From positions 62,001 to 126,000 of the IMG/VR virus record IMGVR_UViG_3300030102_006934: DNA of 64,000 nt; one strand, written 5' to 3'. The position numbers were made by a program, and so were the translations under genes. The notes beneath the pieces were generated by a model, which was not told where the DNA came from, ran no database searches, and saw nothing but the letters and a program-made list of their open reading frames with translations. Below, piece by piece: positions 21,531-57,348 of this stretch; position 1 is the first letter of the stretch, and each line of letters opens with the position of its first letter.

Positions 21531-21556
21531 ATATATTAAATAACATTTAAGACATT

Positions 21557-21583
21557 AAAAAGCCCACAGTTGTGGGCTTTTTT
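21557..21583 (+). terminator. intrinsic terminator
   Basis: AAAAGCCCAC-AGTT-GTGGGCTTTT. Confidence 0.75.
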
Positions 21584-21618
21584 ATTATAAATATATATTT
21601 ATTATAAAAATAAACACT

Positions 21619-36288: not shown

Positions 36289-37197
36289 CTAACTTAGTAA
36301 GTCTGTACGACCATCTATATAAGTTATATGTCCGTAATTACCACTCATTAGAATATCCTTGTACTCACCCCAATCTTTTGTTGTTCTATATAGGGTTGCG
36401 TTTCTTACAATATAACCCTTATTAGTAAAAGTACTACAGTAATGTTTCCATACTTCACCATGACCCTCTTTCCAATCAATACCCATGTCTATTAATGTTT
36501 GTTGTACCTCACACGCTTCATCATCATCCAACTGACTTATATCAATATAATATTCACCATTGTAAAAATCATAGTTAGGTATTTCATCAACCCAACCGAA
36601 GTCATTTTTAGACTCGTTGATATCGGTTAGTTTTGGTTGTAAAACATATACACCTCTGTTAAATTTTCCAGCAACTGTAGAACTAAATTGTGGAGCACAA
36701 TCTTTAGCGTAGAAATCTTTTTTACTATGTTGGTGTGTGCAAACCTTAACTTCAGCTGAATTAATCCCAGGTTCTAACCAATATATTGTAGGTATTCCTT
36801 GAGAGGAAACCCATTTACTTTTTTCAAGGGGACTATACCAATAAAATGGTTTGTTGTATAAAATATCAATAGTTTCTTCATCTACCTTAGAATCAATATC
36901 CTTAATCCAATCAAAGTCATTAGATTCTTTAATTGATTTAGGGTTAACTTTTTCGGCTGAATGCCACCATCCTTGATGTTTCTCTGACCATCTATATCCT
37001 AGACTTGTCGCTAGATTAAATAGTAAGTCTTCATCTATATCGTCTACATCGTCTACAAAGTTCTTTATAATATAACGCATTTTATCATCGTCTCTAAAAG
37101 ATATATAAGGTGAAATTGTTAATTCATCAGCTTCTATATCCTTAATCCATTGAAGGTCATTATTAATTTCTTCTCTGATAACTTTTTTCAGACTCAT
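36289..37197 (-). CDS. leader + three-module FDW polyprotein
   Basis: MSLKKVIREEINNDLQWIKD; IKESNDFDWIKD; INESKNDFGWVDE. Confidence 0.75.
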   Translation of the reverse strand: MSLKKVIREEINNDLQWIKDIEADELTISPYISFRDDDKMRYIIKNFVDDVDDIDEDLLFNLATSLGYRWSEKHQGWWHSAEKVNPKSIKESNDFDWIKDIDSKVDEETIDILYNKPFYWYSPLEKSKWVSSQGIPTIYWLEPGINSAEVKVCTHQHSKKDFYAKDCAPQFSSTVAGKFNRGVYVLQPKLTDINESKNDFGWVDEIPNYDFYNGEYYIDISQLDDDEACEVQQTLIDMGIDWKEGHGEVWKHYCSTFTNKGYIVRNATLYRTTKDWGEYKDILMSGNYGHITYIDGRTDLLS

Positions 37198-38502: not shown

Positions 38503-38946
38503 TTATTCTTTTGGTTTGACGGTGCTTAGTTCAGTATCCCTATGATTGTCAAAATAGTCTCTACAACGTTCTATTACCTCGTCTTTATCCTCTTGGGATT
38601 CTGGATACCAAGCCATCATCGATACAATTATAGATTTTTTATTATAGGCAGTTCCAGGTGGGTAAATATCAAAATAAAGTGAGTTAGGATATCCACTATC
38701 ATCTTTTATCCCATCACGAATACTATATACTGAACTACTAGTGTGTAAATCATCATTACTCTCTATTACACCAATTATATGATCTAATATCATTAATTGT
38801 TGTTCTTTTGGTATATTACCTAACCATACCTTATAATCACCTGGTGGGTATTTATCGATATTTAATATTTCATTTGGGATGAGTTTGATTTCTTTTACCC
38901 AATCAAAATCATTAATTTCTTCTCTTATAATATTCCTAAGACTCAT
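38503..38946 (-). CDS. leader + FDW single-module protein
   Basis: MSLRNIIREEINDFDWVKE. Confidence 0.7.
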   Translation of the reverse strand: MSLRNIIREEINDFDWVKEIKLIPNEILNIDKYPPGDYKVWLGNIPKEQQLMILDHIIGVIESNDDLHTSSSVYSIRDGIKDDSGYPNSLYFDIYPPGTAYNKKSIIVSMMAWYPESQEDKDEVIERCRDYFDNHRDTELSTVKPKE

Positions 38947-41360: not shown

Positions 41361-41379
41361 TATAAAAAAATAAAAAAAA

Positions 41380-44300: not shown

Positions 44301-46137
44301 TACTGATGAATTTAAGTCAAGTAAAAATTTGTTCGGTTTATCTCAAATGAGTTTAGGTTTCGCAGAGAAAGGAACGGAATTAAACGCTGGTAGGGGAGCA
44401 CCCTCTACTGTGGGTATGAAAGTATTTACTACAGATAATACCGCGTCTAGTGTTAGTGATGGTGGAAATATAACTGATGTTACAGATGAAGCAAAATCTA
44501 AGGCAGGTAGTACGGTTACTTTCCAAACGGGAGGTACTAATACCACAATATTATTTACCACACAAAGAGTTTCTCCAGATTTTTCCACACCATTAAAATA
44601 TTATGGGTTGGATTTAAATGTCTTACAGAAAAAAGTGGGTGGTGATTATACCTTTGAATATTGGGACGGTTCGGAATGGGTTGAGGATTTGGTTCATATT
44701 CATTCTGCTGATTTAGGTTATAGTTATGGTAATGAATTGTTTTTGAGAAGTCAAAGTGATGAAAATTTAATTTTTGATTTAAGTAAAGATTCTTGGTCAG
44801 TTAAAACTATAAATGGTGTAGATGGTTATTGGATGAGGTGTAGAATGACCAGTACTGGTACGACTCAACCTACAATAGAACAATCTAAAATAATTTATGA
44901 TAGTAGTACCATAAGTAAAGATGGTGTACTTTCTTTTAATGGTAAATCTCTTTATAAGGAGGTAACAAATTTATATAATGGAACATGGGGTTATCCAGTC
45001 TCTACCTTATCTGATTATAACGTTACTGTGGGGTCAGGTACAGGCTCAGAAACTTGGACACATGAATTTTTAGATTCTCAGTTTGCCAATAATGAAGCAG
45101 CAACTTTTGTACTAAAAATACCACAAGGTGCTAGTACATCACAAAAAGTTAATGTTAACGCTACTTACACATTAAACGGTACAGCAGCAGACACAACGGC
45201 AGCTCAATTAGAGTTTTCCTTTTTACCAGTGGAAGTCGCAAACATTAGAGTCGCTGATGGAGAAGGTAGTAAAGAACCAATCCCTAGAATTGTTTCCGCA
45301 ACAACAGAATTTAACGTAGATGCGGCTCAAACAACAAAACCTTTAACTGAAATAGGGGAAAATAAAATATTTCAATCTCCTTTAGGTAGTTTCGACATCT
45401 CAAATTATTATGAAGGTGATATAGTACTTATGAGGTTAGAAAAAGAGAGTGGTACTAACGTTAATTTTAATTTAATATCTTTAGACTTCGAAGTTTCTAA
45501 ATGGAGTTTAGGTAAACAGTCAGAAGGGTTAAAAATAGCCACTGAAACAATATTTAGTGAGGATTGGTCTGACTTTGGTGTTAGTAATGGTTGGCAATAT
45601 GAACAAGATTCTGGGGAGGACAACTTATGGGTAGTTAGTAGTGGTACCTCTAGAACGGGAGACAACTCAGCATATATAACTAATGATAGTGGAGGTACTA
45701 ATGTATATGAATATAATGTTAGTAATACTAATAACGGAACACATTTATATGTCGATTTCTCAATTCCAGCAAAAGCAAGTAGTTTAACTGTTAATTTCTA
45801 TTGGACAGCGAAAGGTGAAAACGGTGGAGGATCGACCTCTTGGGATTACGGTAGGGTTGGTTTATTACCAACTAGTACAACACCAAGTGCTGGTAGTGAA
45901 TTTTCTAGTACTTTTAGAATAGGAGCAGATTCTAACTCAAATAAATTTAATTTAGGGTATAACGGAGGTGCTTTCGAAGATGATTGGCAATTAGAAACAA
46001 TACCAATTTCAAATAGTTTATGGACTGCTGGTGAAGATAGAAGACTATGTTTAACTTGGAAAAACGATTTCGGTGCGGGTACACAACCACCATTCGCGGT
46101 AACAGATATAACAATTGATATACAGTATTTAGAATAG
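41380..46137 (+). CDS. long tail fibre/spike: tandem DTFVTGATL..RNDG repeats + beta-helix (pectin-lyase-like) domain
   Basis: ~640 aa repeat stalk; WVDSIFGDDS...PYLTIEQAL...GDTLVVRPGIY beta-helix cap. Confidence 0.75.
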   Translation: MTIGNINNKESGASVRNKLNQLINEVNTLASQISSGDTNTFVTGATLVSTILDIERNDGVDISVDLSSINSNVFVDSGNANPITQQLTFTNTSGGTFNVTNAAALFSGNDVNVTGGTYNPTNGCVTFSTNSASTFDVCGFLTGLTDTFISGTTLVGTSFTLNRTDGVNLTTDFSSIVDDKLDITTFDSYTANTTDNVVTGATLVGTTLELERNNGLSDVTVDLSPLSGSSVDTFVTGSTLIGTSFTLKRNDGVDITTDLNPIVNNKLDITTFDSYTANTTDNVVTGATLVGPILELERNNGLSDVTVDLSSLTGSVDTNTFVTGSTLVGTTLNLERNDGVTVSVNLNSLTGSTDTNTFVTGTTLNGNDLIIERNDGVEITTNLNPILSGKLDTTLFNSYTANTTDNVVTGATLVGTTLELGRNNGLSDVTVDLSSIDNNVFVNSGKANAATQRLSFTNTTGGTFTVTDSAALFSDNDVNVTGGTYNPTNGCVTFNTNSGTTFDVCGFVTGLTDTFITGTTLVGTNFTLNRTDGVNLTTDFNPILSGKLDITTFDSYTANTTDNFVTGATLVGSTYTIKRNDGVNISTNLNPILSGTVDTTLFNSYTANTQTEINNKLNITTFDSYTANTTDNVVTGATLVDTSLGLERNNGLSDVTVDLSPLSDINTGNILWVDSIFGDDSTAVTNRQDKPYLTIEQALSASTVGDTLVVRPGIYDEEGLVVSKGVSLVSEGGWEVTTIGKSSATASRDILELNENSFIDGFSVNVPEGNFNGIIASNSGGTSTANNITFYGNGGTGSTGTGLFKTGGGKLIGFSIRVEGGGMGNCLKVDSGTLALEGVHVPQSNGEIKNVLLVTTSGGTNAGIAQMVGFNSGNSNVSNAIRTQGGSSGVIPVVKIFTPNIFGSTNALSASGDYEDINLLGGSLENVTYSVKVDLTGTGVGASYRITSNHQPNYIYPPAVAYTADFGLDFTQESTDEFKSSKNLFGLSQMSLGFAEKGTELNAGRGAPSTVGMKVFTTDNTASSVSDGGNITDVTDEAKSKAGSTVTFQTGGTNTTILFTTQRVSPDFSTPLKYYGLDLNVLQKKVGGDYTFEYWDGSEWVEDLVHIHSADLGYSYGNELFLRSQSDENLIFDLSKDSWSVKTINGVDGYWMRCRMTSTGTTQPTIEQSKIIYDSSTISKDGVLSFNGKSLYKEVTNLYNGTWGYPVSTLSDYNVTVGSGTGSETWTHEFLDSQFANNEAATFVLKIPQGASTSQKVNVNATYTLNGTAADTTAAQLEFSFLPVEVANIRVADGEGSKEPIPRIVSATTEFNVDAAQTTKPLTEIGENKIFQSPLGSFDISNYYEGDIVLMRLEKESGTNVNFNLISLDFEVSKWSLGKQSEGLKIATETIFSEDWSDFGVSNGWQYEQDSGEDNLWVVSSGTSRTGDNSAYITNDSGGTNVYEYNVSNTNNGTHLYVDFSIPAKASSLTVNFYWTAKGENGGGSTSWDYGRVGLLPTSTTPSAGSEFSSTFRIGADSNSNKFNLGYNGGAFEDDWQLETIPISNSLWTAGEDRRLCLTWKNDFGAGTQPPFAVTDITIDIQYLE

Positions 46138-46255: not shown

Positions 46256-46339
46256 GTCTTTTAGATTCGTTTATAAATATAGTAACATGTATCAAAGTAT
46301 AGTATTTATTTTTAACCTTTAATCGATATTTATTAATAT

Positions 46340-47809
46340 ATGAGTATCAAAAAATACATAAAAGAAGAGATGGATAGTTTTGACTGGATTAAGGACGTAA
46401 AAACTAATGATACTATCGCTAAAGAAATTTATGATACTCTAAAATGGCATAAGGTTCCCAATGTAACAACAGATTTTGTGAAAGTACCGTGGGTTGACAT
46501 TGTTTTTGCGGTAAGAAAAAGAAACTTAAGTGACTCCAAAATACCTTTAATCACCCCAAGTACATTTTACAAAGGTTTTACAAAATACGTAAAAGAATAT
46601 TACAATATTTTTGATCCTCAAACTGGTGTGTTAGAAATTTACAATAAAGTTAGGGCATTAATGGGGGATAAAATTCATGGAACTATTACTGAGTCTAATG
46701 ACTTTGGTTGGACAAATAGTTCTAAACTCATATACCCTCAAGACTTAGTCGGTTATTATTTTACTTACACTGAAAAAGAATATACAATAACTAAGGTGGA
46801 TGAAATGTATTTAAGTGATGATCCAGAAGATGAAAAACTCACCGTTTATTATAAGTATCGAGCTTATGAGGGGTTACGTAAAAACAAAATGGATGTGGAT
46901 ACTTTGATTTATAGAATCAAAGGTGGTGACTACGGTCTATATGACTTGGAGGGTAATCCTGTTAATCCAGATGATTTGGTATATAGTGATGGTAAGTTGG
47001 AAGATGTTGATTCTGTTAATGAAAATTCTGATTTTGATTGGGTGAGTGATGTTACCCCTTATATTGATAAGGTTACTGACCTACAAATTGGTGAGTATTA
47101 TGAAATAAAGGACATAGACACAAAACTTTTCACCATGTTGGTTGATTGTGGGTGGCACTATGAGTCTGAATTAATTAGAGATTTATATGATAAAGGTGAA
47201 ATACTTACCGTTAAAATTAGTGAAACGGTACCAAACGCTATATTAAATTACTATGTTTATTGTGATGGGCGTACAACATCATGGAAACCTAATAATACCG
47301 TTTCAAAGAGGGGTCCTGTAGCGGGAATAGAACTTTATAGTGAAATGGATACCTCACATCACCCAAGACATGATTGGATACCTTTCCACTCTTTTTATAT
47401 TACAGATGGTATGATAACATTTTACAGAGATAATAAGGATTTGAATGAGTCCGCAGAATTTGGTTGGATAGAAGATGTAAAACCAAATGTGTTGAAGGCT
47501 TTGGCTGATGCGAGTACGGGTGATGAGAGAATTAATTTTATTTATAGTGATGAAAATAAATATTTCACCTCCATTGAGGATGAAAAAGGTTTTAACTACT
47601 TTACTAGAGTATCTCTTATTTCATACTTAAGAAAAGTTAGGCAGGATTGGGATACCATGCCTGAGGTAATACTTAATAGTATGACCGTTGATGAGATGTT
47701 GGGTTTTATAGAAAAATTTTTAAAAGATAACTTCCCTGACCAACAACCAGTTGCTATATATGAGGACTATTTATATTTATATGAATTTATTAAACGTGGA
47801 TTAAAATAA
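46340..47809 (+). CDS. leader + four-module FDW polyprotein
   Basis: IKEEMDSFDWIKD; ITESNDFGW; VNENSDFDWVSD; LNESAEFGWIED. Confidence 0.8.
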   Translation: MSIKKYIKEEMDSFDWIKDVKTNDTIAKEIYDTLKWHKVPNVTTDFVKVPWVDIVFAVRKRNLSDSKIPLITPSTFYKGFTKYVKEYYNIFDPQTGVLEIYNKVRALMGDKIHGTITESNDFGWTNSSKLIYPQDLVGYYFTYTEKEYTITKVDEMYLSDDPEDEKLTVYYKYRAYEGLRKNKMDVDTLIYRIKGGDYGLYDLEGNPVNPDDLVYSDGKLEDVDSVNENSDFDWVSDVTPYIDKVTDLQIGEYYEIKDIDTKLFTMLVDCGWHYESELIRDLYDKGEILTVKISETVPNAILNYYVYCDGRTTSWKPNNTVSKRGPVAGIELYSEMDTSHHPRHDWIPFHSFYITDGMITFYRDNKDLNESAEFGWIEDVKPNVLKALADASTGDERINFIYSDENKYFTSIEDEKGFNYFTRVSLISYLRKVRQDWDTMPEVILNSMTVDEMLGFIEKFLKDNFPDQQPVAIYEDYLYLYEFIKRGLK

Positions 47810-47810
47810 A

Positions 47811-50800
47811 ATGGGGGATAAAAAGGAAGAATTTAATTGGGTTAATGATATCTCAAGTGATTACTGGGACTACCATAACGTTTTAGTGTTTAATGATGCC
47901 ATTAGTTATGAAGAGTTCGATGATTTAATCTCTCACGCTTTATATTCCAAGTCACCTAAAAATTCACACCAATGGGGAGACGATGGGAAAAAAGAGGCTT
48001 GGAATTATTTAACCCACCTTGTAAAAAGTTATAGTGTGGGTTATCTTATTTGGGATAAACCATATTTATCCGTTTCAGCTCAACACAAGCTGAAACAAGG
48101 AGACCCAAAATTAGTAAATTATAAGGATATAGTTAATCAAAAACCAAAGTTAGATGAGTCTGATGAATTTAGTTGGGTTAGAGATGAGGTTGATAGTCCG
48201 ATTAGGTTTAGTGTAGGTGATAAAATAAGGGTTATTAATGTGGGTGATGTACAAACTTTCATCGATTTTTTGGGTACTGCTGGTGTATATTATCGTAAAG
48301 GTCTACTTGGAACTAATATTGAGGGTGAGATTATAGATGGTGGTAATGAATATTTATTCCCCTTAAGGGAGAAAAATAGGGGTAAAATAATTTTTTTACC
48401 ATGGTTAGACATGGTAGATTATTGGGCTGACTCCTACCCTGATTTGGATGTTAGGTATGAATTTATAGATGATGACTTAAACGAATCTAGTGATTTAGAT
48501 TGGATTAGAGATGTTGAACCGCCTAATTTAGATTTTAGTTTTGATGGTAAGGAACATTGGGTTGACGTTTCACAAATAGATAGAGAAGGTAGGAAAAAAA
48601 TTGTAAATTATATTAAAAAAACTGTTCCAAATTACGAAGAATTTGAAAGTGATCTGTTCGGTCATATATCTAGAGGTAATTATAAAGGAATTATTATTCA
48701 TTGTGGTTCTGATAGGACCTATTATGAACCTGAAGAAGGTTTATTATGTAGTGCAAATAGTAGTTACGAAGATGATTATAAAATAGACAACCCATACTCA
48801 GATATGCTAAAATCTGTTTATCTTGATGGCCAAGAAATATTAGATTATATTACTGTGACTGATGATGTTGATGAAGAATTAGATGAATCTTTGGAGTGGT
48901 CAGACAAGGACGCACCTTTTGATGAAAAAGATAAAAGTTTTGAATCAGACCCTAGTTGGAAGAATGATGAAGATTGGTCATTAAACCCCGAAAGGTCTTA
49001 TTGGAAACAAGGGGATACTGGGGGTTCTGGTGGTGGTGACGTGAATGAGTCCAATGAGTTAGAATGGATTTATGATATAAGACCCACATTAAAAGACGTT
49101 TTTGATGAAAATTTGATTGGGGTTGGGGATATTTTAACACTTTATGGGACATTGGAAGATGAAAATGGTTTGGAAGAACAACAGGTAGATGATTTTAAAG
49201 TAAAGATAGAGACTGTCTCAAATTCAGAAAGACCTCGATTAGTCTCTACTTACTTCAAACCATTACAAAAAAAATATTGGGGTTTCTTGGGTTATGATGG
49301 TACGGGAGATATAAGGTTCACTAAAAAAGATGGTAACTTACAGTTGGTGGATAGAATTAGTGGTAAAGGTTTGGTAGAAGGGTCTAATGACTGGGATTGG
49401 GTGGAAGATATACCAGGAACAAAAGAATTTGACCAAAAATATAGATATTTTGAAATTTTGGCTTGTTATGGTGTTGATTATGAATCTGAAGAGTGTGATG
49501 ATGAATATTCACATTATGTTAGAATACCCAAATATGAGGCTGATGAAATATGGGACCATTCGGTTGATTATTTCGCTGGAATTGCTGATGGTGATTCTTA
49601 TGATGTTATTATGTACGCAATACAAAATAGACTAATATCACACTTTGAAATCAACGAAATTGTTATGTTTGAGGGTGTTAGAGAGTTGGATAAAAATACT
49701 TATGATAAACTAACAGATTATAGAGATGACTTGCTTACAAATGAATCATATTTTATCAATGAAAAAAGTGATGACTTTGACTGGGTTAAGGATATAAAAC
49801 CCAATTGGGGTACTTATTATGGTGGTATAATAATGAAGGACATTGAGGGTCTACCTAAAAAATTAGAAGATGTAACAAGTGAAATGTTACTACCTATTTG
49901 GATGAAAATAGAAACTATTAATAGACAAATATTAACTAGAAAAAACAGAGATGATAAACATGGTGTGAGTGAGACGTTAATTGATTCTATGGATCAAATC
50001 GAGTGGCTGTTTGGTAGAATAATGGCTTTGGTTGATGGTGAAACCGATAGTTTAGTATCTTCCAGAATGGAACCACAGGAGTATTACAATTCAAGAAAAC
50101 TAACTATAATTAGTTACATAAAAGGCATGGCTCAACAATTAGAACTACTCGGTGAATCTAATGACTTTGGTTGGGTAGAAGATGTAACACCAAGGATGGA
50201 CGCTACCCTATTAAAACCTGGACAAAAATTCTATGACAAATGGGGTGGCGTTATAAGAGTGTTAGAGTACTTGGGTAGGGATGATTCTGAAGGTGAAGTT
50301 TGTTATGAACCCCCTTGTAGTTTATTAAGATTTAGGAAAATAAAAGACCCAAGTGGTTACATACCAATTCCTGGATTACCAGCTGATGACCCACAAAACA
50401 CAGATATGGTAATGAACCCAAACGATTTCGATAGTTACATTGAATCTGGTAAATTAAAGTTAGTTAGTAAACGTACAATGTATGAATCAAAAGATTTTGA
50501 TTGGGTTAGGGATGTTGAAACCGATAGAACTGACTCTAAGTATTATATAATAGATAGAAGAAGTTTCTCTGGGGTTCCTGAAAAACAAAAAGATGAGTGG
50601 TTTATGATAGAAATATTAGAAAATGACAAGTATGGCATTCATTGGAGACCTTACGCATGGAATTTGGTGAATGTTCATACTTGGAATCCAACCCATCGAG
50701 TTGGAAAAATGTCAAACGATGAATTTAAAAATTTATTAGGTTTAGGTTCAAAGGATAAACCTTACTGGTACCCTCATGATGGGGATTTGACTGACCTACC

Positions 50801-51575
50801 CAAAAATTACGACCATGGGTTGTTGTCTCAACTAAATACCCCCAAAAATCTTAGGGAGTCTGATGATGTTAGCCATTTTAATTGGGTTAAAAAGATCTCA
50901 AGTGACGACTATGAACCCCGTACTGGTGACCACATTGAAATTGTTAATCAAGGAAAACCACATTTATTTAAAAATTGGTTATCCCCCACTATTTGGATGG
51001 ATTATAACATGGGTAAAATAACTAACACAGATGGTAATATAGAGGGTGTAGTACAAAATGATTACCCAACTCAAAACGCTCAAGATAATTTTGTCGTCAA
51101 AATAAAAGGTACCAAAAATGAATATATTTTTCTACCTAAGAGATATAAAATAAAACAAATTAAAGAAAAAACTAGGGACCCTGAATGGCACGGTTTAGAC
51201 ATTATATATAGACCTATTGAATTAAGATCAGAATTAAAAGAGGATTCTAGTGACACCTCTGATTGGGACTGGGCTAAAAAGATTGAACCAAAATATACAA
51301 AAATAGCACCAAATATATATCAATATGGTAGTGGGAGTTTACCAAGGATAAAGGTTGTATTTAAAAGGGTAGTGGATGGTGAAATAAAAACCACCGCAAT
51401 AGAGTTTGACGATTATGAGTTTTTAGATAGTGAAGAATACATGAATAGGCATTTCATTTTAATGGGTGTTGATGATGAGGATAATGATTGGATAGTTGAT
51501 GGTATAGCTTATCTTATTGGTGGGGGTGAGTATGAGTGGGATGTTAATTGGGATTCTATAGAAAATAATGGTTAG
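47811..51575 (+). CDS. ~10-11 module FDW polyprotein
   Basis: Motif recurs about every 110-130 aa across 1254 aa. Confidence 0.8.
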   Translation: MGDKKEEFNWVNDISSDYWDYHNVLVFNDAISYEEFDDLISHALYSKSPKNSHQWGDDGKKEAWNYLTHLVKSYSVGYLIWDKPYLSVSAQHKLKQGDPKLVNYKDIVNQKPKLDESDEFSWVRDEVDSPIRFSVGDKIRVINVGDVQTFIDFLGTAGVYYRKGLLGTNIEGEIIDGGNEYLFPLREKNRGKIIFLPWLDMVDYWADSYPDLDVRYEFIDDDLNESSDLDWIRDVEPPNLDFSFDGKEHWVDVSQIDREGRKKIVNYIKKTVPNYEEFESDLFGHISRGNYKGIIIHCGSDRTYYEPEEGLLCSANSSYEDDYKIDNPYSDMLKSVYLDGQEILDYITVTDDVDEELDESLEWSDKDAPFDEKDKSFESDPSWKNDEDWSLNPERSYWKQGDTGGSGGGDVNESNELEWIYDIRPTLKDVFDENLIGVGDILTLYGTLEDENGLEEQQVDDFKVKIETVSNSERPRLVSTYFKPLQKKYWGFLGYDGTGDIRFTKKDGNLQLVDRISGKGLVEGSNDWDWVEDIPGTKEFDQKYRYFEILACYGVDYESEECDDEYSHYVRIPKYEADEIWDHSVDYFAGIADGDSYDVIMYAIQNRLISHFEINEIVMFEGVRELDKNTYDKLTDYRDDLLTNESYFINEKSDDFDWVKDIKPNWGTYYGGIIMKDIEGLPKKLEDVTSEMLLPIWMKIETINRQILTRKNRDDKHGVSETLIDSMDQIEWLFGRIMALVDGETDSLVSSRMEPQEYYNSRKLTIISYIKGMAQQLELLGESNDFGWVEDVTPRMDATLLKPGQKFYDKWGGVIRVLEYLGRDDSEGEVCYEPPCSLLRFRKIKDPSGYIPIPGLPADDPQNTDMVMNPNDFDSYIESGKLKLVSKRTMYESKDFDWVRDVETDRTDSKYYIIDRRSFSGVPEKQKDEWFMIEILENDKYGIHWRPYAWNLVNVHTWNPTHRVGKMSNDEFKNLLGLGSKDKPYWYPHDGDLTDLPKNYDHGLLSQLNTPKNLRESDDVSHFNWVKKISSDDYEPRTGDHIEIVNQGKPHLFKNWLSPTIWMDYNMGKITNTDGNIEGVVQNDYPTQNAQDNFVVKIKGTKNEYIFLPKRYKIKQIKEKTRDPEWHGLDIIYRPIELRSELKEDSSDTSDWDWAKKIEPKYTKIAPNIYQYGSGSLPRIKVVFKRVVDGEIKTTAIEFDDYEFLDSEEYMNRHFILMGVDDEDNDWIVDGIAYLIGGGEYEWDVNWDSIENNG

Positions 51576-51577
51576 TT

Positions 51578-52792
51578 ATGGAGATAAGAAAAATAATAAG
51601 GGAAGAATTAAATGATTTCGATTGGGTTAGGGATGTTGAACCTGAATTAACGCCAGAAACATTAGAATTAATCTATAATAAGCCATTTCACTTTCACCGT
51701 ACAGAAGATAGTGGACCAAATATGAAGAATGGTAAACCAACAGTCTACTGGGTGGATAGGAGGTTGAGTGAGTTAAAAAATACTAATAAGTCTTCTAAGA
51801 ACCCTATTGCGGATGATAGAGAGTTTTTTTTATGTTATAAAGAACCCCAAGGACCACACACACTTCACCAATGTAGTGAAATGTATGCTAAAACAATAAT
51901 CAGTTATATCAAAAGAAAACAACTTGTTCAACAGAAAGAATTATCAGATATTAAAGAATCTGAAATTTATTTAAATAAAATACTTAATAGGTTATCCTTA
52001 ATTAAAGAAGATGGTAAAAAACCAGACATGGAGTGGGATTTTACTAAGACTAATTTAGATAAATCTAAAAAATGGGTTAAAACAAAAGAAGATGTTAAAA
52101 AATATCTTTCACTCTTATTTGATAAATTAAAAAATTTACCTAGAAAAACTAAAATTAAAATAATTAAGTATGTTTTAACTTCTTTTATTGGTTTATTAAC
52201 AATAAGCCAATTACAAGATATTGTGGATGAGACCTCACCAGAGAAGATAGAAATTAAGAAACCAATAAAACAAGAACTTCCAACAGACAAGGATTCAACC
52301 AAAGTTATGAACACTCAAATAAATAAAATTAGAAAACCTAGTGAAGAGTTAACTACTTTTCTAAAAAAAGAAGAGGGGTACGTTGATAAAGGTTATAAGA
52401 TTGGTGATGGTAAAATAACGATTGGTTGGGGTCATGCTGAGGATATTGATGGTTCTAAATATACATTGGGTCAACAGATTGACACAACAGAAGCCGAAAC
52501 ATTATTAAGACAAGATATTAAAGAATCTTCAGATGCTTTAAACAGAATTTTAGATGATTGGGAAAGTAAGGGTATCAAGGTTGATATTACACAAGATATG
52601 TATAATGTGATGACATCTATGGTTTTTAATATGGGTATCGGTAACTTTAGAAATTCTGATTTTATCCAATTAGTTAAGGGTAATGAGTTGAGTAGAGCTA
52701 AGGAAAAAATAAAAACAACAAGTTCACACTTATTTGGTAAATTTCCAGGTCTTAAAAAAAGAAGAAAATTAGAATCAGATTTATTTAATTAA
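51578..52792 (+). CDS. leader + FDW module + C-terminal phage lysozyme (GH24-like) domain
   Basis: MEIRKIIREELNDFDW; KKEEG...YKIGDGKITIGWGH, SMVFNMG.GNF, PGL..RR..E..LF. Confidence 0.8.
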   Translation: MEIRKIIREELNDFDWVRDVEPELTPETLELIYNKPFHFHRTEDSGPNMKNGKPTVYWVDRRLSELKNTNKSSKNPIADDREFFLCYKEPQGPHTLHQCSEMYAKTIISYIKRKQLVQQKELSDIKESEIYLNKILNRLSLIKEDGKKPDMEWDFTKTNLDKSKKWVKTKEDVKKYLSLLFDKLKNLPRKTKIKIIKYVLTSFIGLLTISQLQDIVDETSPEKIEIKKPIKQELPTDKDSTKVMNTQINKIRKPSEELTTFLKKEEGYVDKGYKIGDGKITIGWGHAEDIDGSKYTLGQQIDTTEAETLLRQDIKESSDALNRILDDWESKGIKVDITQDMYNVMTSMVFNMGIGNFRNSDFIQLVKGNELSRAKEKIKTTSSHLFGKFPGLKKRRKLESDLFN

Positions 52793-53010
52793 AAATCGAA
52801 AGGTTTTATAAATTTTGGTGGGTTTATGTTACCAGCAAAGCTATTGAATTTGATATTACCTGCCGCTATACCACTTATTAATTTAGATTTTTTAATAATG
52901 AACCTACTACCATCAGATAAATCTAAGTCAATATCATCATTATTTATATCTGTTATAATAGCGTGATAACCATTATTATAACCTAAAACGTCACCTATTT
53001 TGAAAATCAT
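52789..53010 (-). CDS. small SH3-like hypothetical protein
   Basis: FKIGDVL. Confidence 0.5.
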   Translation of the reverse strand: MIFKIGDVLGYNNGYHAIITDINNDDIDLDLSDGSRFIIKKSKLISGIAAGNIKFNSFAGNINPPKFIKPFDF

Positions 53011-53013
53011 GAT

Positions 53014-53220
53014 TTATTTTAATATGTGTTTATCTAAAGAAAAAACTACTTTATCATCTAAATAAACCTTGTAACCATCCTTCACTAGGTCCCAACCAAA
53101 TTCCATCATCAAATATTTTACTTGTCTATCTAATTCTTTAGAAGCTTCAACCTCTTTTTCAAAAAAAGAAACATAGTTAGGACATTCACCAGTTTTATCC
53201 AATAAACAATATATATCCAT
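53014..53220 (-). CDS. small hypothetical protein
   Basis: ATG 53220 preferred. Confidence 0.45.
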   Translation of the reverse strand: MDIYCLLDKTGECPNYVSFFEKEVEASKELDRQVKYLMMEFGWDLVKDGYKVYLDDKVVFSLDKHILK

Positions 53221-53224
53221 TACT

Positions 53225-53686
53225 TTATTCGTTGAAAAAAAATGATATCGCTGGGAAATTACTCTCCTCATCGTTATTTAAACCACTCTGAGATATTGTT
53301 TCTGTTGCGTAGTATGTTTGACTAGACGTGACTACCTCTCTAGTAGATACTAATACATCGTCAACGTATACCTCCATAATAAACCAATAGTAGAGTTGCG
53401 GGTTAACAATAAACTTAACCTCATCACCACTTTTTAGTTGCCAAAATTCGTAATCCCACTCATAACCAGGTGTTATGTAGTCTTTGTAAATTCTAGGTGG
53501 ATCATTGTCGTAGTTAGGTGAACAACTAACCTCAATAAAATCTGAAGACCCTACTGGTGGAACTTCCATAAATGTTAGATGAAATCTAACTCTGTGAAAA
53601 TTATTGTCGTGTTTATCACAAGAAGAAGTGATTAAACTTAAGATTAATAATAGAAAGAGAAATAATTTGTTAAATAAAGTTTTCAT
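53225..53686 (-). CDS. lipoprotein
   Basis: Signal peptide with ITSS-C lipobox; TTTG..TATATTTG promoter. Confidence 0.65.
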   Translation of the reverse strand: MKTLFNKLFLFLLLILSLITSSCDKHDNNFHRVRFHLTFMEVPPVGSSDFIEVSCSPNYDNDPPRIYKDYITPGYEWDYEFWQLKSGDEVKFIVNPQLYYWFIMEVYVDDVLVSTREVVTSSQTYYATETISQSGLNNDEESNFPAISFFFNE

Positions 53687-53747
53687 TGTTTTTTGTTTTT
53701 TTCTATATACAAATATAGTGAATTATCATTAAGCCACCAAATCTAAA

Positions 53748-53951
53748 TTAAATATTTTTATCATGATAACCTTCGAATACTTCATTTATTTTTTCAGTGG
53801 ATATACCCCCATCTGTTATAGGTGTATCTAAAAGAATTTTCATAGTCTGAAAAGCCATTCCGAATTTACCCTCTTTCAACATATCACCCATCACTTTAAG
53901 TTTAAAATCTTCTGGTAAACCTAAAAACCATTGTTTTTCTTTAAATGTCAT
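53748..53951 (-). CDS. small hypothetical protein
   Basis: ORF. Confidence 0.5.
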   Translation of the reverse strand: MTFKEKQWFLGLPEDFKLKVMGDMLKEGKFGMAFQTMKILLDTPITDGGISTEKINEVFEGYHDKNI

Positions 53952-53977
53952 ATCCTATATTTTTATATAAATATAAA

Positions 53978-54018
53978 TAAAAAAACTCATTCTCCAAAAG
54001 AAAATGAGTTTTTTTTTT
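53978..54018. terminator. bidirectional terminator hairpin
   Basis: A-run-CTCATT...AATGAG-T-run. Confidence 0.65.
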
Positions 54019-54019
54019 A

Positions 54020-54153
54020 CTTGGGGGAGGGTATCTAACCCTCCACAGCTTCTCTTCGTGATTAATACTTCTAAAAAGATCTTCAATATTAACCCTTATT
54101 ACCCGAAACCAACCTACTCGTCAGTAGGTCGCATATACTTTTCGCCACCCAAG
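54020..54153 (-). ncRNA. tRNA-like RNA with ~65-nt extended variable arm
   Basis: CTTGGG/CCCAAG acceptor-like stem, TGGCGAAAAGTATATGC D-arm-like, GACCTAC/GTAGGTT stem, GGAGGG-TTAGATA-CCCTCC T-arm-like; TTGACT..TATTAT upstream and terminator downstream. Confidence 0.55.
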
Positions 54154-54196
54154 ATTACTTAATAATAATAATAATAATAAAACTATTAGTCAACAC

Positions 54197-54580
54197 TTAC
54201 TCACTAAAATTAAATTTCTTTAGACATTTACCATTTAAAGATAATCCTATCATTTGGTTCTTTAAATTTTCCGTCTCTTCTAAGACAGCCTTTTTTGTCC
54301 ATACTTCACGTGTATCCATTAAATGACGAGTATCGAAACCAATTACCCACCCCCCTTTTAACTCTTCATTAGTAAAGTTACCTTCATTTATGTTGGGTCT
54401 CAAATCGAAAAATATCTCGTAAGTTCTACTAAAGGTTAATCCACCATGGACGTAAACTGGTATTTCATCGTATTCCACACCCCACATTGGATGGTCTTTA
54501 AAAATGATTACGTACCCATTACCCCATCCTTGTTTATTCCAATCGTTTTCTAAGACAAATGATAAAATTTTAATTTTCAT
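54197..54580 (-). CDS. conserved phage hypothetical protein
   Basis: GWGNGYV...HP..G...VHGGLTF...W.IGFDT.H motif. Confidence 0.7.
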   Translation of the reverse strand: MKIKILSFVLENDWNKQGWGNGYVIIFKDHPMWGVEYDEIPVYVHGGLTFSRTYEIFFDLRPNINEGNFTNEELKGGWVIGFDTRHLMDTREVWTKKAVLEETENLKNQMIGLSLNGKCLKKFNFSE

Positions 54581-54642
54581 AATACAAATATACTACAATT
54601 TTTTATGTAAAACAAGATATTTATGAATATATAAAACATGGG

Positions 54643-57348
54643 ATGTTAAAAAAAGTTACTTTACCTAAAAATATTAATTTTTTAAAGGAGTCGGAATTTG
54701 ATTTTGTTGACGATAAAACCAACAACCCTTTAGATGGTGTTAAGTTTACTATGAATAAATCACCAATAAAAGGTGACGAGAAAAACATTTACTATATAAT
54801 AGATGACGGTGGCTTATTTGTTAAAATAAAATGGTACGGTGGTGGTTATTTAAAAAGAACCTTTAAGAGAGATAGGGTAATGGATTTATTTAAAAGAGGG
54901 GTTTGGGAACCTTATTTTGAACCTACTAAGAACATTAATGAATCAGAAAATGGTGACTTTGATTGGATAAAAGATACTACCCCAAAAGAGATAGACAACT
55001 ATTATAAAGTTGTTTTGGATTTTTTTGATTGGAGTAGGAAATATAAAGGTTACAGTTATAGTGCAAATGATGTAGGTGTTGTAGAGTGGTACATACCAAT
55101 AGTTGATTTTCCATATCCGTTTCATGACTATTATTTTTACGCAACCCCTTATTGGGAGGGTAATGGTGTTATGAATGTTACCGCTGTGGATGAACAAGGC
55201 CACGAAATAGAGTTACACACAATACCATTACCTAAATTTAAATACGAAGAACAACTAAAAGAATGGTTAACGTCAGAGTACCCAAAAATAGTTTACGAAG
55301 AAATAAAACATTTTGAAGACACTCGGCAATATAGTGGTGATACTTTAACCGAAACCAAAGATTTACAGTGGATAAAAGATGTGGGTACCAATAGAATCGA
55401 TTTGGTTAAAAAAATAAAAGAGACGTTATCTAATCATGGTGTTGAGGTAGAATGGGAAAGGGACCACTTGGCTTATAACCAAGAAGACACAGATGGTACT
55501 AGGGGTGAGGTTTTTGCTAAATTTTTCTATGATGCTGGTGATAGACAGTTTTTTATTGAACTTATAGAATCGGAAAATGATTTATATGGTTTTTATGTTT
55601 ATGAATATAATGAACAATATGACACTTATTATGTAAACGCTAATTATAATTCCCTTGGTATACCTAGGGAATCAGATGAAACTTGGCGTCATGTGTGTTG
55701 GACGGTTCTAAATCAAATGGATGCTTTTCCAAAAAAAGATAAGGTTGGTGATTTAGCAGATTATTTAAAAGAATCTGATGATTTCGAATGGGTTAGAGAT
55801 TACAAAGATGTTTTTGATAAAAACAAAAACTACGCTCTATACGTGGGTAAAATTAATATTGATGACATGACTTTACCGCCAAGGGAAAATCCGAATAACA
55901 AATCAATATACATTCATAAATTAAATAAACAGGTGAAGTTTATTCTTAGTTTAATACATCAGTTTGAAGATATGGGTTATGATATAAGGGAGTTAGATAG
56001 AGAGATTGCCATCCCCTCAAACCAAAGAGTTTCTTGGATATACATAAACGGTAAAGAAAGTAAATCTGGAAAACCAATGTCGTTAGAGTTTGATGACATA
56101 CCCCCTGGAGACCCAACCTATGATGGTCAATATGAGATTATTGATAATTTTAAAGACTTTTATTTTTTAATTACTAATGAAGTTATTAAAGAGTCCGATA
56201 ATTTGGATTGGATTAGGGATATTAAATCACAAGGTTTTGAAAAAAGTAAAAGTTATGTTGTTGATGTTAGTAACTTAATGGTAGATACACCAATGTCTGT
56301 TTCCCCTACTTCTGAGGAATACACTAAATTAACAAGAGCAGATGTTCTAGACAAATTTAAAGCGTTAGGTTATAATGTTGATGATATTTCTGTTGCTGAC
56401 GCTGATTATCTATATATTGAACCTAACGATGAAGCTGGTTATTGGGATGATACTGTTTGGGTTAAGCAAACTCATTGGGTAGACTATGATATGGAACACA
56501 ACACACCCGACCCAACTTATAATGGCAAGTACGAAATGATAGATGTTAATGACCTTATGTTTTTACTTGATAATAAATTTATTAGTGAATCTAAATCAAT
56601 AACTGAAGTAGCGGGTATTTCATTTGAATCAAGGGAATGGGCTAAAATAATAAATGACAAAATATTAAAAAACCCAAATGAAAAAGAGAGGTTGATTATT
56701 GATGGTTACGATTATCCAGAAGCCTTTAAGAGTTTCCCAATAGACTATATTGTGATTGATTTTTACGATAAGTTAACTGGTTATGCTCAAGAACACTCTG
56801 GTTATGATAAAGATGGTAACTATGTTGTACTATTATATATACAACCTAAAGTAATTAGTGGTACTGGTGGGTTTAACCTAAGAACAGTACTTAATCATGA
56901 AATGAAACACGCATGGGACGATTATAACAGGCTTTCTAAAGGCCAACCTAGTATTGATAAGAATAAGGAAAACAGGGAGTTGTATAACAAAGATTTTATA
57001 TTAATGTTATCAGATAAAAATGTTCGTGGACCCATAAAAGAAATCTTAAAATATTATTATTATTTATCTGAACTAGAGAAGACGGCTTACCTAGAAAATG
57101 TTTATGATGGTAATTTAAATTACGAAAAAATAATAAGGGATATATCTAGTAAAGACTTCGAACCTTTTAAAGAAAGATTTGATTTGGATATTAATTGGCA
57201 TTTAATGAATACGGCTTACGATATACCATTCTTGAAGAAATTTAAATCCCCAATAGAATTTATTGATTATAGTTCTGAGGAATTAAGGTCAAAAGCGGTT
57301 GATATGATTAAGAAAATCAACAAAATGAAATATATTCATAATAAATAA
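54643..57348 (+). CDS. five-module FDW polyprotein with C-terminal HExxH metallopeptidase-like domain
   Basis: LKESEFDF; INESENGDFDWIKD; LTETKDLQWIKD; LKESDDFEWVRD; IKESDNLDWIRD; LNHEMKHAWD...E..AY. Confidence 0.78.
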   Translation: MLKKVTLPKNINFLKESEFDFVDDKTNNPLDGVKFTMNKSPIKGDEKNIYYIIDDGGLFVKIKWYGGGYLKRTFKRDRVMDLFKRGVWEPYFEPTKNINESENGDFDWIKDTTPKEIDNYYKVVLDFFDWSRKYKGYSYSANDVGVVEWYIPIVDFPYPFHDYYFYATPYWEGNGVMNVTAVDEQGHEIELHTIPLPKFKYEEQLKEWLTSEYPKIVYEEIKHFEDTRQYSGDTLTETKDLQWIKDVGTNRIDLVKKIKETLSNHGVEVEWERDHLAYNQEDTDGTRGEVFAKFFYDAGDRQFFIELIESENDLYGFYVYEYNEQYDTYYVNANYNSLGIPRESDETWRHVCWTVLNQMDAFPKKDKVGDLADYLKESDDFEWVRDYKDVFDKNKNYALYVGKINIDDMTLPPRENPNNKSIYIHKLNKQVKFILSLIHQFEDMGYDIRELDREIAIPSNQRVSWIYINGKESKSGKPMSLEFDDIPPGDPTYDGQYEIIDNFKDFYFLITNEVIKESDNLDWIRDIKSQGFEKSKSYVVDVSNLMVDTPMSVSPTSEEYTKLTRADVLDKFKALGYNVDDISVADADYLYIEPNDEAGYWDDTVWVKQTHWVDYDMEHNTPDPTYNGKYEMIDVNDLMFLLDNKFISESKSITEVAGISFESREWAKIINDKILKNPNEKERLIIDGYDYPEAFKSFPIDYIVIDFYDKLTGYAQEHSGYDKDGNYVVLLYIQPKVISGTGGFNLRTVLNHEMKHAWDDYNRLSKGQPSIDKNKENRELYNKDFILMLSDKNVRGPIKEILKYYYYLSELEKTAYLENVYDGNLNYEKIIRDISSKDFEPFKERFDLDINWHLMNTAYDIPFLKKFKSPIEFIDYSSEELRSKAVDMIKKINKMKYIHNK

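What the first reader, a model, noticed from the sequence alone, without database searches (positions are those of the whole stretch)
46340..57348. Modular polyproteins punctuated by a [ILV]xE-S-x-D-F-D-W-[VI]-K-D motif: candidate protease-processed capsid cargo
Seen: about 25 copies of the motif in 8 genes (31203, 33869, 36289 x3, 38503, 46340 x4, 47811 x10-11, 51578, 54643 x5). Examples: LNESSDLDWIRD, LGESNDFGWVED, MYESKDFDWVRD, LKESDDFEWVRD. Each opens a mostly unrelated ~90-150 aa domain, and the genes or operons follow the ATATTTAT motif. Established: T4 gp21-type prohead proteases cut after [IL]xE, and T4 internal proteins are packaged through a cleavable N-terminal targeting peptide. 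Inference: these are packaged polyproteins cut into many small proteins that all expose the same acidic DFDW N-terminal tag (docking or ejection signal), giving an injected, expandable effector library.
Basis: partly seen in the sequence, partly recalled or inferred. Interest (0 to 1): 0.88.

Follow-up and report, generated by a model that had tools for sequence, protein, structure and literature searches.

The report
Tagged cassette polyproteins of a jumbo phage
An uncultured 380-kb marine phage makes late-gene proteins from strings of unrelated small modules, each opened by the same ~14-residue peptide that looks like a protease cut site plus a tag. This may be a swappable library of virion-delivered proteins, but neither cutting nor packaging has been shown.

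Summary
There are 26 in-frame copies of h-x-E-S-x-D-F-D-W-[VI]-[KR]-D in 8 genes; a strict pattern gives 22 hits against 0.16 expected by chance.

What I could show:
- The peptide is selected as a peptide, because its synonymous sites vary freely.
- It lies in low-confidence linkers of an AlphaFold model.
- It always opens a module and never ends a protein.
- A [LIVM]-x-E lies just upstream in 245 of 246 copies, against 12-13% background.
- With the motif removed, 296 of 300 module pairs show no profile similarity.
- Relatives gain, lose and reorder whole modules exactly in motif register.
- 358 protein clusters in public metagenomes carry 2-13 copies each. No cultured phage, Pfam or PHROG family matches.
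- The genes share an ATATTTAT[AT] upstream element with the sheath, tube and neck genes of the same genome.
- Two conserved tagged genes sit in the tail-gene cluster, and one tagged protein ends in a lysozyme domain.

What I could not show: cleavage, packaging, or which protease acts. No T4 gp21 homologue was found in the roughly 35% of the genome I could read. Other candidates are two ClpP genes, an invariant HExxH domain ending one polyprotein class, and an SprT-like protease.

The parts
31203..31472 (+). Single-module tagged gene (leader, then DGFDWARD; GTG start)
   Evidence: translation; ATATTTAT at 31191
31531..31923 (+). Gene with the MxxxKIIREE leader but no DFDW core
   Evidence: ATATTTAT at 31518
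33869..34249 (+). Single-module tagged gene (W at residue 16)
   Evidence: ATATTTAT at 33855
34876..35406 (+). SprT-like HExxH plus zinc-ribbon metalloprotease inside the island; one candidate processing enzyme
   Evidence: 86% identical to the L002 gene that carries a precomputed PF10263 hit
36289..37197 (-). Three-module tagged protein (W at residues 17, 97, 202)
   Evidence: Its homologues show whole modules inserted between a shared leader and a shared last module.
38503..38946 (-). Single-module tagged gene. The same module, with its leader, is found inside a 428-aa protein elsewhere in this genome.
   Evidence: L009:2209-2304
46326..46333 (+). ATATTTAT promoter-like element, 6 nt upstream of the g46340 start codon
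   Evidence: The same element precedes the sheath, tube and neck genes.
46340..47809 (+). Four-module polyprotein, first gene of the operon
47811..51575 (+). Polyprotein with 10 tag copies (1254 aa). W at residues 10, 122, 231, 419, 530, 658, 788, 898, 1025, 1154.
   Evidence: In the AlphaFold model every motif in the modelled stretch (residues 105-900) lies in a linker with pLDDT below 50. 41 homologues carry shuffled module sets.
50148..50192 (+). One typical junction (L-G-E-S-N-D-F-G-W-V-E-D-V-T-P). All 26 junction coordinates are listed.
51578..52792 (+). Leader and tag, then a ~240-aa region, then a C-terminal phage lysozyme domain
   Evidence: PF00959 E 3.5e-20; phrog_7 E 2.8e-26; phrog_2083 (internal virion lysozyme motif) E 5.8e-5
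54617..54624 (+). ATATTTAT element, 18 nt upstream of the g54643 start codon
54643..57348 (+). Five-copy polyprotein that ends in the conserved HExxH domain
56584..57345 (+). Conserved 254-aa C-terminal domain with invariant HE[MILF][KR]H and a downstream invariant Glu. Fold unknown; possibly a metallopeptidase.
   Evidence: 127 clusters. The domain is C-terminal in 89/99 proteins, and 88/99 have 1-8 tags upstream. AlphaFold pLDDT 89.7. No significant PDB match. Two uncharacterised phage proteins match in BFVD.
39705..46137 (+). Context: a neck-appendage-like gene (551 aa, SHAEG repeats) and a 1585-aa gene directly upstream of the operon. Both are absent at this position in relative L002.
   Evidence: phrog_25468; 40-49% identity to the appendage gene next to the gp13-like gene; synteny

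Best explanation
These are late-expressed cassette polyproteins of a distantly T4-like jumbo myovirus. Each ~95-130-aa module is an independent, mostly acidic small domain with its own two-part N-terminal junction peptide. The first part is [LIVM]-x-E, usually followed by Ser. I read it as a cut site for a Glu-specific maturation protease. The second part is D-[FL]-D-W-[VI]-[KR]-D-[IV]-x-P, which would stay on the released module as a common N-terminal tag. In stand-alone genes the same junction follows a 9-11-residue leader (M-x-x-K-x-I-I-R-E-E). That layout matches the 10-residue capsid targeting sequence of the T4 internal proteins. On this reading the precursors enter the prohead, are cut at every junction, and the modules are carried in the virion and delivered to the host. 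The modules include a lysozyme and, in relatives, NUDIX and nucleotidyltransferase domains. New modules are gained and lost by in-frame recombination between junctions.

Shown here: the motif, its selection at the peptide level, its position in linkers, the unrelatedness and shuffling of the modules, and the upstream element shared with virion genes.

Inferred: cleavage, which protease acts, packaging and delivery, and the role of the DFDW tag.
For: - Motif counts are far above chance.
- Synonymous sites in the motif vary freely, so selection acts on the peptide.
- h-x-E lies upstream of the core in 245/246 copies against 12-13% background. Ser follows the Glu in 204 of those 245.
- The motif is N-terminal to each module and never a C-terminal tail.
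- Eighteen proteins start with Met directly at the core, with W at residue 6-12 and no h-x-E. That is roughly where a cut would leave the new N-terminus.
- The same modules occur both as stand-alone genes and fused inside polyproteins, keeping their leader.
- Every motif in the modelled stretch lies in a linker with pLDDT below 50; three of the seven modules (residues 31-115, 445-530, 690-780) have cores at pLDDT about 80.
- 296 of 300 module pairs are unrelated by hhalign.
- Insertions and deletions fall exactly in motif register.
- ATATTTAT[AT] lies upstream of the polyprotein genes and of the sheath, tube, 790-aa, neck and endolysin-operon genes. It is absent before the DNA polymerase, exonuclease and the tail-cluster ClpP genes.
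- Two conserved tagged genes lie in the sheath-tube-ClpP cluster, and one of them is present in 26 of 48 related loci.
- One tagged protein carries a lysozyme, while a separate amidase is the likely endolysin.
- From the literature: the T4, phiKZ, 201phi2-1 and SPN3US prohead proteases all cut after Glu, and SPN3US prefers Ser at P1' (PMC5694885, PMC10052503). The T4 targeting sequence is 10 residues long, with processing determinants at residues 8 and 10 (PMC9026906). T4 internal proteins are diverse apart from that conserved targeting sequence (PMC3012670).
Against: - There is no direct evidence of cleavage or of presence in virions.
- No gp21/S77-type protease or major capsid protein was found in any locus I held. 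I could read only about 135 kb of the 380-kb genome.
- Known prohead proteases need few determinants, so the strongly conserved DFDW core (W invariant, more conserved than the Glu) is not explained by cleavage alone.
- One targeting signal per polyprotein would be enough, yet every module keeps the tag.
- The modules are acidic (pI 4.1-5.5), which is awkward for proteins packed alongside DNA.
- The K/I/R/E-rich leader could partly reflect selection for A-rich 5' coding regions on short-leader mRNAs.
- The polyprotein islands are not inside the head-gene cluster.
- A few genes with no obvious virion role, such as a PAP2 gene, also carry the upstream element.
Confidence: 0.4

Rival explanations
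1. The polyproteins are processed, but by a dedicated metallopeptidase rather than the prohead protease. Candidates are the invariant HExxH domain that ends the g54643 class (acting in cis and in trans) and the SprT-like protease g34876 inside the island. The long conserved junction is that enzyme's recognition site, much like the cut sites in RNA-virus polyproteins or the self-processing proposed for polyvalent proteins. Packaging is then not required.
For: - HE[MILF][KR]H and a downstream Glu are invariant in 99 proteins. The domain is C-terminal in 89/99, with 1-8 tags upstream in 88/99.
- It stays 60-99% identical while the upstream modules vary.
- It is present in a 210-kb relative.
- There is a weak Peptidase_M91 hit, E 0.007.
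- The SprT-like HEIAH gene is conserved in the island in L002 and L005-L007.
- A 12-14-residue conserved site is more typical of a site-specific polyprotein protease than of a prohead protease.
- C-terminal metallopeptidases are proposed to process polyvalent proteins (PMC5512222).
Against: - A high-confidence model of the HExxH domain (pLDDT 89.7) has no significant match to any solved zincin. The best PDB hit has E 0.36, and selecase and LTA4H appear only at E 3-5.
- A profile search of PDB sequences found nothing.
- Only two uncharacterised phage proteins match in BFVD.
- Most tagged proteins lack the domain.
- A distant stand-alone form of the domain exists in proteins with no DFDW tags.
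Confidence: 0.17
2. The proteins are not cut. The junction is a short linear docking motif repeated along a beads-on-a-string protein. It would bind one common partner many times over, for example the inner capsid surface or scaffold (as encapsulin cargo peptides do), or the phage's own chaperone and Clp machinery.
For: - The core D-F-D-W-[VI]-[KR]-D is more conserved than the Glu; W is invariant.
- It is an acidic-aromatic peptide in flexible linkers, which is the usual form of a docking motif.
- Every module keeps it.
- The phage encodes DnaJ, a ClpA/B-like AAA+ protein and two ClpP genes, and tagged genes lie next to the AAA+ gene and next to one ClpP.
Against: - The near-universal h-x-E-S just upstream, with variable spacing of 1-6 residues, is hard to explain by docking alone.
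- Modules move freely between stand-alone and fused forms.
- Some proteins start with Met right at the core.
- No partner has been identified.
Confidence: 0.25
3. The motif is the first structural element of one repeated fold, so these are ordinary repeat proteins.
For: - Spacing is fairly regular (median 112 aa).
- A few modules are related to each other (4 of 300 pairs), and some look like small SH3-like barrels.
Against: - 296 of 300 pairs score below 13% hhalign probability with the motif removed.
- Predicted modules differ in secondary-structure class: all-beta, alpha/beta and all-alpha.
- The motif residues have pLDDT below 50 and are not packed into the domains.
- Enzymes with quite different folds carry the same tag: lysozyme, NUDIX and a weak (sub-threshold) nucleotidyltransferase match.
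Confidence: 0.03
4. The conservation lies in the DNA, as a recombination or regulatory signal, and the peptide is a by-product.
For: Module insertions and deletions are flanked by motif repeats, so recombination between junctions does happen.
Against: Codons within the motif vary freely: GAA/GAG, GAT/GAC, four or more Ser codons, GTT/GTA/GTG, AAA/AAG/AGA/AGG. The amino acids stay fixed.
Confidence: 0.02

Closest known systems
T4 internal proteins (IPI-III, Alt) with the capsid targeting sequence, processed by gp21
   Same: - A short N-terminal leader ends in hydrophobic-x-Glu (here 9-11 residues; 10 in T4, PMC9026906).
- A conserved leader sits in front of highly diverse small proteins (PMC3012670).
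- The genes lie in variable islands away from the head genes.
- The phage has T4-like neck, sheath, tube and baseplate genes.
   Different: - Here many modules are strung into polyproteins of up to 10-13 units.
- A second, strongly conserved element (DFDW[VI][KR]D) follows the putative cut site and would remain on the product. As far as I know, T4 has nothing like it.
- The modules are acidic.
- No gp21 homologue has been found so far.
- Nothing has been shown experimentally.
Polyvalent proteins of phages and conjugative elements (Iyer et al. 2017, PMC5512222)
   Same: - Two to 15 unrelated domains in one polypeptide.
- Extensive domain shuffling.
- Predicted to be packaged and delivered with the DNA.
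- Often end in a metallopeptidase proposed to process them. One class here ends in an invariant HExxH domain.
   Different: - None of the signature domains of that class was detected by Pfam; only lysozyme and NUDIX reach the thresholds I set, plus a sub-threshold nucleotidyltransferase hit.
- In the passages of that paper I read, no conserved junction peptide is mentioned.
- The HExxH domain matches no known peptidase fold.
Ejection and inner-body proteins of phiKZ-like jumbo phages (phiKZ, 201phi2-1, SPN3US), cut by S80 proteases
   Same: - Many head-internal proteins in paralogous families.
- Cleavage after Glu at a three-residue motif, with Ser preferred at P1' in SPN3US.
- Several sites per precursor (PMC10052503, PMC5694885).
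   Different: - P3 is Ala, Ser or Gly in those phages, but Leu, Ile, Met or Val here.
- In those phages the cuts remove propeptides rather than releasing a string of functional modules.
- They have no common tag on the products.
- This lineage is unrelated: no BLAST match.
Encapsulin cargo-loading peptides
   Same: A short conserved peptide on otherwise unrelated proteins directs them to the inside of an HK97-fold shell.
   Different: Those peptides are usually C-terminal, single and uncleaved. This is an analogy only and was not tested.
Polyproteins of RNA viruses with site-specific proteases (for example potyvirus NIa sites)
   Same: A long conserved junction sequence is repeated between unrelated functional units.
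   Different: - Here the virus is a DNA phage and the units are accessory modules, not the core replication or capsid proteins.
- The order and number of units change freely between relatives.

Membership tests
T4-type capsid-targeted internal proteins | An N-terminal leader of about 10 residues ending in hydrophobic-x-Glu | tested here: met
   W falls at residue 16-17 in 85 proteins. The leader M-x-x-K-x-I-I-R-E-E places h-x-E at residues 7-9 or 9-11.
T4-type capsid-targeted internal proteins | Diverse proteins behind a conserved leader | tested here: met
   About 21 unrelated module families in the window; 358 clusters elsewhere
T4-type capsid-targeted internal proteins | The genome encodes a gp21-type (S77/S80) prohead protease | tested here: inconclusive
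   phmmer with T4 gp21 found nothing in the window or in about 170 related phage loci, but only about 135 of the 380 kb of this genome were available.
T4-type capsid-targeted internal proteins | Cleavage after the Glu, and presence of the product in the head | not testable with these tools
   This needs virion proteomics or a cleavage assay.
T4-like myovirus (morphogenesis genes) | Homologues of gp13, gp18, gp19 and baseplate proteins | tested here: met
   - PF26809 on the gp13-like gene.
- Sheath, 4e-27 to T4 gp18 in the PDB.
- Tube, 5e-7 to T4 gp19.
- PF12322 (T4_baseplate) in L019.
Similarity is remote: tblastn of the gp13-like gene finds no cultured phage.
Polyvalent proteins (Iyer et al. 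2017) | Two to 15 distinct domains in one polypeptide, with shuffled architectures | tested here: met
Polyvalent proteins (Iyer et al. 2017) | Signature conflict domains of that class (MPTase-PolyVal, ART, ParB-like, methylases and so on) | tested here: not met
   Pfam scans of all window modules and of 40 family members found only lysozyme, NUDIX, one PSP hit (E 1e-4) and one Lsr2 hit (E 8e-4). A separate scan gave a weak nucleotidyltransferase hit.
Polyvalent proteins (Iyer et al. 2017) | An embedded processing peptidase | tested here: inconclusive
   HExxH plus a downstream Glu are invariant, but the confident model matches no zincin and there is no PDB sequence hit.
phiKZ-type ejection proteins | Cleavage motif (S/A/G)-x-E | tested here: not met
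   P3 is L, M, I or V in all 245 copies scored. The pattern used required a hydrophobic P3, and it was found in 245 of 246 copies.
Single repeated domain family | Modules are homologous to each other beyond the motif | tested here: not met
   4 of 300 pairs are related.

The most novel reading that the evidence does not exclude
The DFDW peptide is a universal handle for a previously unknown phage protein-delivery system. Any small domain placed behind the ~14-residue junction would be released from a precursor and then recognised by one dedicated machine. That machine could be the capsid interior or ejection channel, or the phage's own DnaJ, ClpA/B-like and ClpP set, which might refold or time the removal of proteins that pass through the tail unfolded. 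On this reading the lineage holds a plug-in library of hundreds of unrelated host-directed modules, exchanged by junction-to-junction recombination.
Probability: 0.2. Interest if true: 0.88.

Novelty: new variant of a known kind. Interest (0 to 1): 0.72.

Why it matters
If the modules are cut out and delivered, this is the largest and most regular virion-cargo system known in a phage. At least 17 genes and 45 tagged modules lie in the third of the genome I could read, which is more than 6% of its coding capacity. All of them are addressed by one short peptide.

- That peptide would be a simple sequence handle for finding injected phage proteins in metagenomes. About 358 protein clusters, almost all of unknown function, are immediate candidates for anti-defence or host-takeover factors.
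- It could also serve as a tag for loading foreign proteins into capsids.
- Even if the proteins are not cut, a 14-residue motif conserved across about 20 unrelated folds points to a strong, unknown protein-protein interaction in an abundant and entirely uncultured group of marine jumbo phages.

Tried and rejected
- **DNA-level explanation:** rejected, because synonymous sites vary.
- **One repeated fold:** rejected by hhalign and the AlphaFold model.
- **Known families:** Pfam, PHROGs and NCBIfam scans of the whole proteins and of each module found nothing except the lysozyme and a weak M91 hit.
- **Cultured phages:** megablast of the 19-kb region, and tblastn of the 1585-aa protein, g47811, g38503 (E up to 10) and the gp13-like gene, gave no match.
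- **Cellular genomes:** a degenerate DNA pattern for DFDW[VI]KD gave only single hits in unrelated bacteria among the loci listed, which I take as chance, and no clue to the host.
- **Literature:** no paper contains the motif in a phage context.
- **Prohead protease hunt:**
  - I walked from the gp13-like gene and met only glycosyltransferases.
  - Local phmmer with T4 gp20-24 over about 2,500 ORFs of related loci found portal and tube homologues but no gp21 or gp23.
  - An exact look-up of the ClpP gene failed.
- **Fold searches:** the multi-module model gave nothing significant in the PDB. The HExxH model gave nothing in the PDB and only two uncharacterised phage proteins in BFVD.
- **Transmembrane segment in g51578:** the hydrophobicity peak is marginal (1.31), so I make no claim.
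- **Alignment failure:** one 90-sequence alignment failed, so the Pfam survey of the wider family covers 40 members only.

Full report
**Observation.** A strict pattern for the core motif finds 22 in-frame hits over the six-frame translation of the window. All lie in long ORFs, and shuffles give 0.16 on average. Allowing the variation actually seen and requiring an upstream h-x-E gives 26 copies in 8 genes: g31203 1, g33869 1, g36289 3, g38503 1, g46340 4, g47811 10, g51578 1 and g54643 5. The logo is h-x-E-S-[ND]-D-[FL]-D-W-[VI]-[KR]-D-[IV]-x-P, with W invariant. g46340, g47811 and g51578 are separated by 1 and 2 nt and form one operon.

**Origin.** The window is positions 60,545-124,544 of IMGVR_UViG_3300030102_006934, a 380,343-bp viral contig. 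Close relatives come from Tara and other marine assemblies. GC content is about 31%. The element is a tailed phage:
- It has a peptidoglycan-binding amidase and a bacterial-type tmRNA.
- It has a gp13-like neck gene (PF26809).
- It has a sheath 4e-27 from T4 gp18 and a tube 5e-7 from T4 gp19.
- Relatives carry a T4_baseplate domain.

It is far from anything cultured. There is no megablast or tblastn match for the region, the polyproteins or the neck gene. Its DNA polymerase is only 25% identical to those of Salinibacter phages.

**Anatomy of the junction.**
- Selection is on the peptide. Within the motif the codons vary freely (GAA/GAG, GAT/GAC, several Ser, Val and Lys/Arg codons) while the residues stay fixed.
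- The junction has two parts. A [LIVM]-x-E lies within 10 residues upstream of the core in 21/21 window copies and 224/225 homologue copies, against 12-13% of control 10-mers in the same proteins. The next residue is Ser in 204 of the 245. The spacer to the core is usually 2 residues but ranges from 1 to 6.
- The junction belongs to the module that follows it. In proteins with a motif near the start, W peaks at residue 16-17, behind a leader M-x-x-K-x-I-I-R-E-E. In 294 multi-copy proteins the last W is at least 75 residues from the C-terminus in 95% of cases.
- A minority of proteins (18) start with Met directly at the core, with no h-x-E.
- Some late-type genes have the leader without the core: g31531, g63380 and a PAP2 gene.
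- In an AlphaFold model of g47811 residues 105-900, three module cores reach pLDDT about 80. Every motif in that stretch falls in a segment below 50.

**Modules.**
- With the junction stripped, and using alignments built from homologues, all-against-all hhalign of 25 window modules gives 4 related pairs and 296 pairs below 13% probability.
- Predicted secondary structure differs between modules.
- Modules are acidic, mostly pI 4.1-5.5.
- Recognisable domains are rare. They are a lysozyme at the end of g51578, NUDIX in 3 of 40 family members, and a weak nucleotidyltransferase hit in a tagged protein elsewhere in this genome.
- The 41 homologues of g47811 and 28 of g36289 carry different subsets and orders of the same modules.
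- Pairwise alignments show that each inserted or deleted module begins and ends in motif register and is flanked by motif repeats.
- A module that stands alone here (g38503) occurs, with its leader, inside a 428-aa protein at the far end of the genome. Fusion and fission of modules therefore seem to be tolerated.

**Breadth.**
- A 31-position profile of the junction, searched against 1.84 billion representative proteins, finds 358 proteins at E <= 1e-3 and 75 at E <= 1e-10. All of the 150 listed carry 2-13 matched stretches. Median spacing is 112 residues.
- The exact DFDW[VI]KD coding pattern occurs in only 17 stretches of IMG/VR. Five are from this genome and several others are from low-GC contigs, one of them 210 kb long.
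- In the roughly 135 kb of this genome that I could read there are 17 tagged ORFs with 45 copies, totalling 8,112 residues.
- No Pfam, PHROG or NCBIfam model covers the junction, and no paper mentions it.

**Link to the virion.**
- The element ATATTTAT[AT] lies 3-30 nt upstream of the start codons of the tagged genes or operons.
- The same element lies 12-45 nt upstream of the gp13-like neck gene, the tube, the sheath, a 790-aa gene next to the tube, and a 286-aa gene that heads an operon containing two tagged genes. It also precedes the operon that contains the amidase.
- It is absent before the DNA polymerase, exonuclease and the tail-cluster ClpP genes. I take it to be the late promoter, by inference.
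- Two single-module tagged genes are conserved in the sheath-tube-ClpP cluster. One of them is present in 26 of 48 related loci.
- In this genome the operon lies directly after a neck-appendage paralogue and a 1585-aa gene.
- These links are circumstantial but consistent.

**The protease question.**
- Published prohead proteases of T4 and of the phiKZ group all cut after Glu. SPN3US prefers Ser at P1' (PMC5694885, PMC10052503). The T4 targeting sequence is 10 residues long, with processing determinants at residues 8 and 10 (PMC9026906). The junction fits this pattern.
- I could not find a gp21 or gp23 homologue in the window or in about 170 related phage loci.
- Four other candidates exist:
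  - A canonical ClpP next to the tmRNA gene (window 19336-20034).
  - A second ClpP in the tail cluster. In one relative it lies directly downstream of a gp20-like portal gene, which is the usual place for a prohead protease.
  - An SprT-like HExxH protein inside the island.
  - A 254-residue domain with invariant HE[MILF][KR]H that ends the g54643 class, in 127 clusters.
- The last domain folds confidently (pLDDT 89.7). It matches no solved structure (best E 0.36) and only two uncharacterised phage proteins in BFVD. Its being a peptidase remains a guess.

**Mechanism.** My preferred reading, at about 40%, is the following. The genes are late genes whose products are cut after the h-x-E at each junction by a Glu-specific maturation protease. 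The resulting small modules each begin with the DFDW tag and travel in the virion as cargo.

The cut-site reading rests on four findings:
- the universal h-x-E-S;
- the T4-like leader geometry;
- proteins that start at the core;
- the free interchange between fused and split forms.

What it does not explain is why the DFDW core is the most conserved part and is kept on every module. The tag must do something in its own right, such as docking, ejection or recognition.

The rivals are:
- processing by a dedicated metallopeptidase, without any need for packaging (about 17%);
- no cleavage, with the junction acting as a repeated docking motif (about 25%);
- a repeated fold (about 3%);
- a DNA-level signal (about 2%).

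The last two are largely excluded by tests here.

**Comparison and novelty.** The closest known systems are:
- the T4 internal proteins, which share the leader logic and the diversity;
- polyvalent proteins, which share the multi-domain shuffled architecture and a possible terminal peptidase;
- the phiKZ-group ejection proteins, which share multiple Glu-specific cuts.

This system differs from all three. It has a long conserved junction that stays with each module. It strings up to 13 modules together. It has none of the signature domains of polyvalent proteins. Its P3 residue is hydrophobic rather than Ala, Ser or Gly. I file it as a new variant of a known kind, namely virion-targeted accessory proteins of large myoviruses. 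Whether it truly belongs to that kind has not been shown.

**Limits.**
- Only about a third of the genome was readable.
- The alignments behind the multi-module model and the hhalign profiles are shallow.
- The promoter assignment rests on co-occurrence alone.
- Every functional step is inference.

Noticed in passing
window 19336-20990: A canonical ClpP homologue lies 0.6 kb upstream of a full-length tmRNA gene. The ClpP is 1e-48 from solved ClpP structures and keeps the conserved GMAASMG serine motif; the tmRNA scores 59.7 bits against Rfam RF00023. The same genome has a second ClpP in the tail cluster (L272:10001-10675) and a ClpA/B-like double AAA+ protein (L018:55-2520). The phage appears to carry its own tagging and proteolysis set.
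   Followed up: partly
window 46326, 54617, 33855, 31191, 31518, 37202(-), 3881, 9834, 11877, 63363; L272 and L045: ATATTTAT[AT] lies 3-45 nt upstream of the start codons of the sheath, tube and neck genes, the endolysin operon and the tagged genes, but not of the replication genes. It is probably the late promoter of this lineage. Leaders are very short and no Shine-Dalgarno sequence is visible.
   Followed up: partly
window 34876-35406: An SprT-like metalloprotease (HEIAH plus a zinc ribbon) is conserved inside the island of tagged genes in this genome and in L002 and L005-L007.
   Followed up: partly
window 39705-46137: A 551-aa protein with SHAEG-type repeats, a paralogue of the neck-appendage-like gene beside the gp13-like gene, is followed by a 1585-aa protein. 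At this position the relative L002 has a 355-aa gene instead, so this looks like an inserted fibre or appendage pair.
   Followed up: partly
window 31531-31923, window 63380-64000, L009:678-1310: Three genes (one encodes a PAP2 phosphatase) start with the same MxxxKIIREE-type leader and follow the same upstream element, but lack the DFDW core. The leader and the core are therefore separable.
   Followed up: no
window 13494-14948 and 17100-18155: A TROVE/Ro60-like protein (DUF2828 plus DUF7788; phrog_850, E 3e-149) and a full-length DnaJ with J domain, zinc finger and C-terminal domain.
   Followed up: no
L260 (IMGVR_UViG_3300048441_000264), 209-2642: In this small contig from a relative, a T4 gp20-like portal gene (5e-27) lies directly upstream of a ClpP homologue that is 72% identical to the tail-cluster ClpP homologue of L019. 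That is the classical position of a prohead protease.
   Followed up: no
P0202 (homologue of g36289), C-terminal ~250 residues: One family member ends in a segment that looks like a GIY-YIG nuclease. I judged this by eye from the alignment. In the related locus L226 a 696-aa neighbouring gene carries a weak precomputed GIY-YIG hit.
   Followed up: no
L002:16730-17080 and 21546-22145: SET-domain and DOT1-like methyltransferase genes lie next to the polyprotein genes in a close relative. These are precomputed Pfam hits.
   Followed up: no
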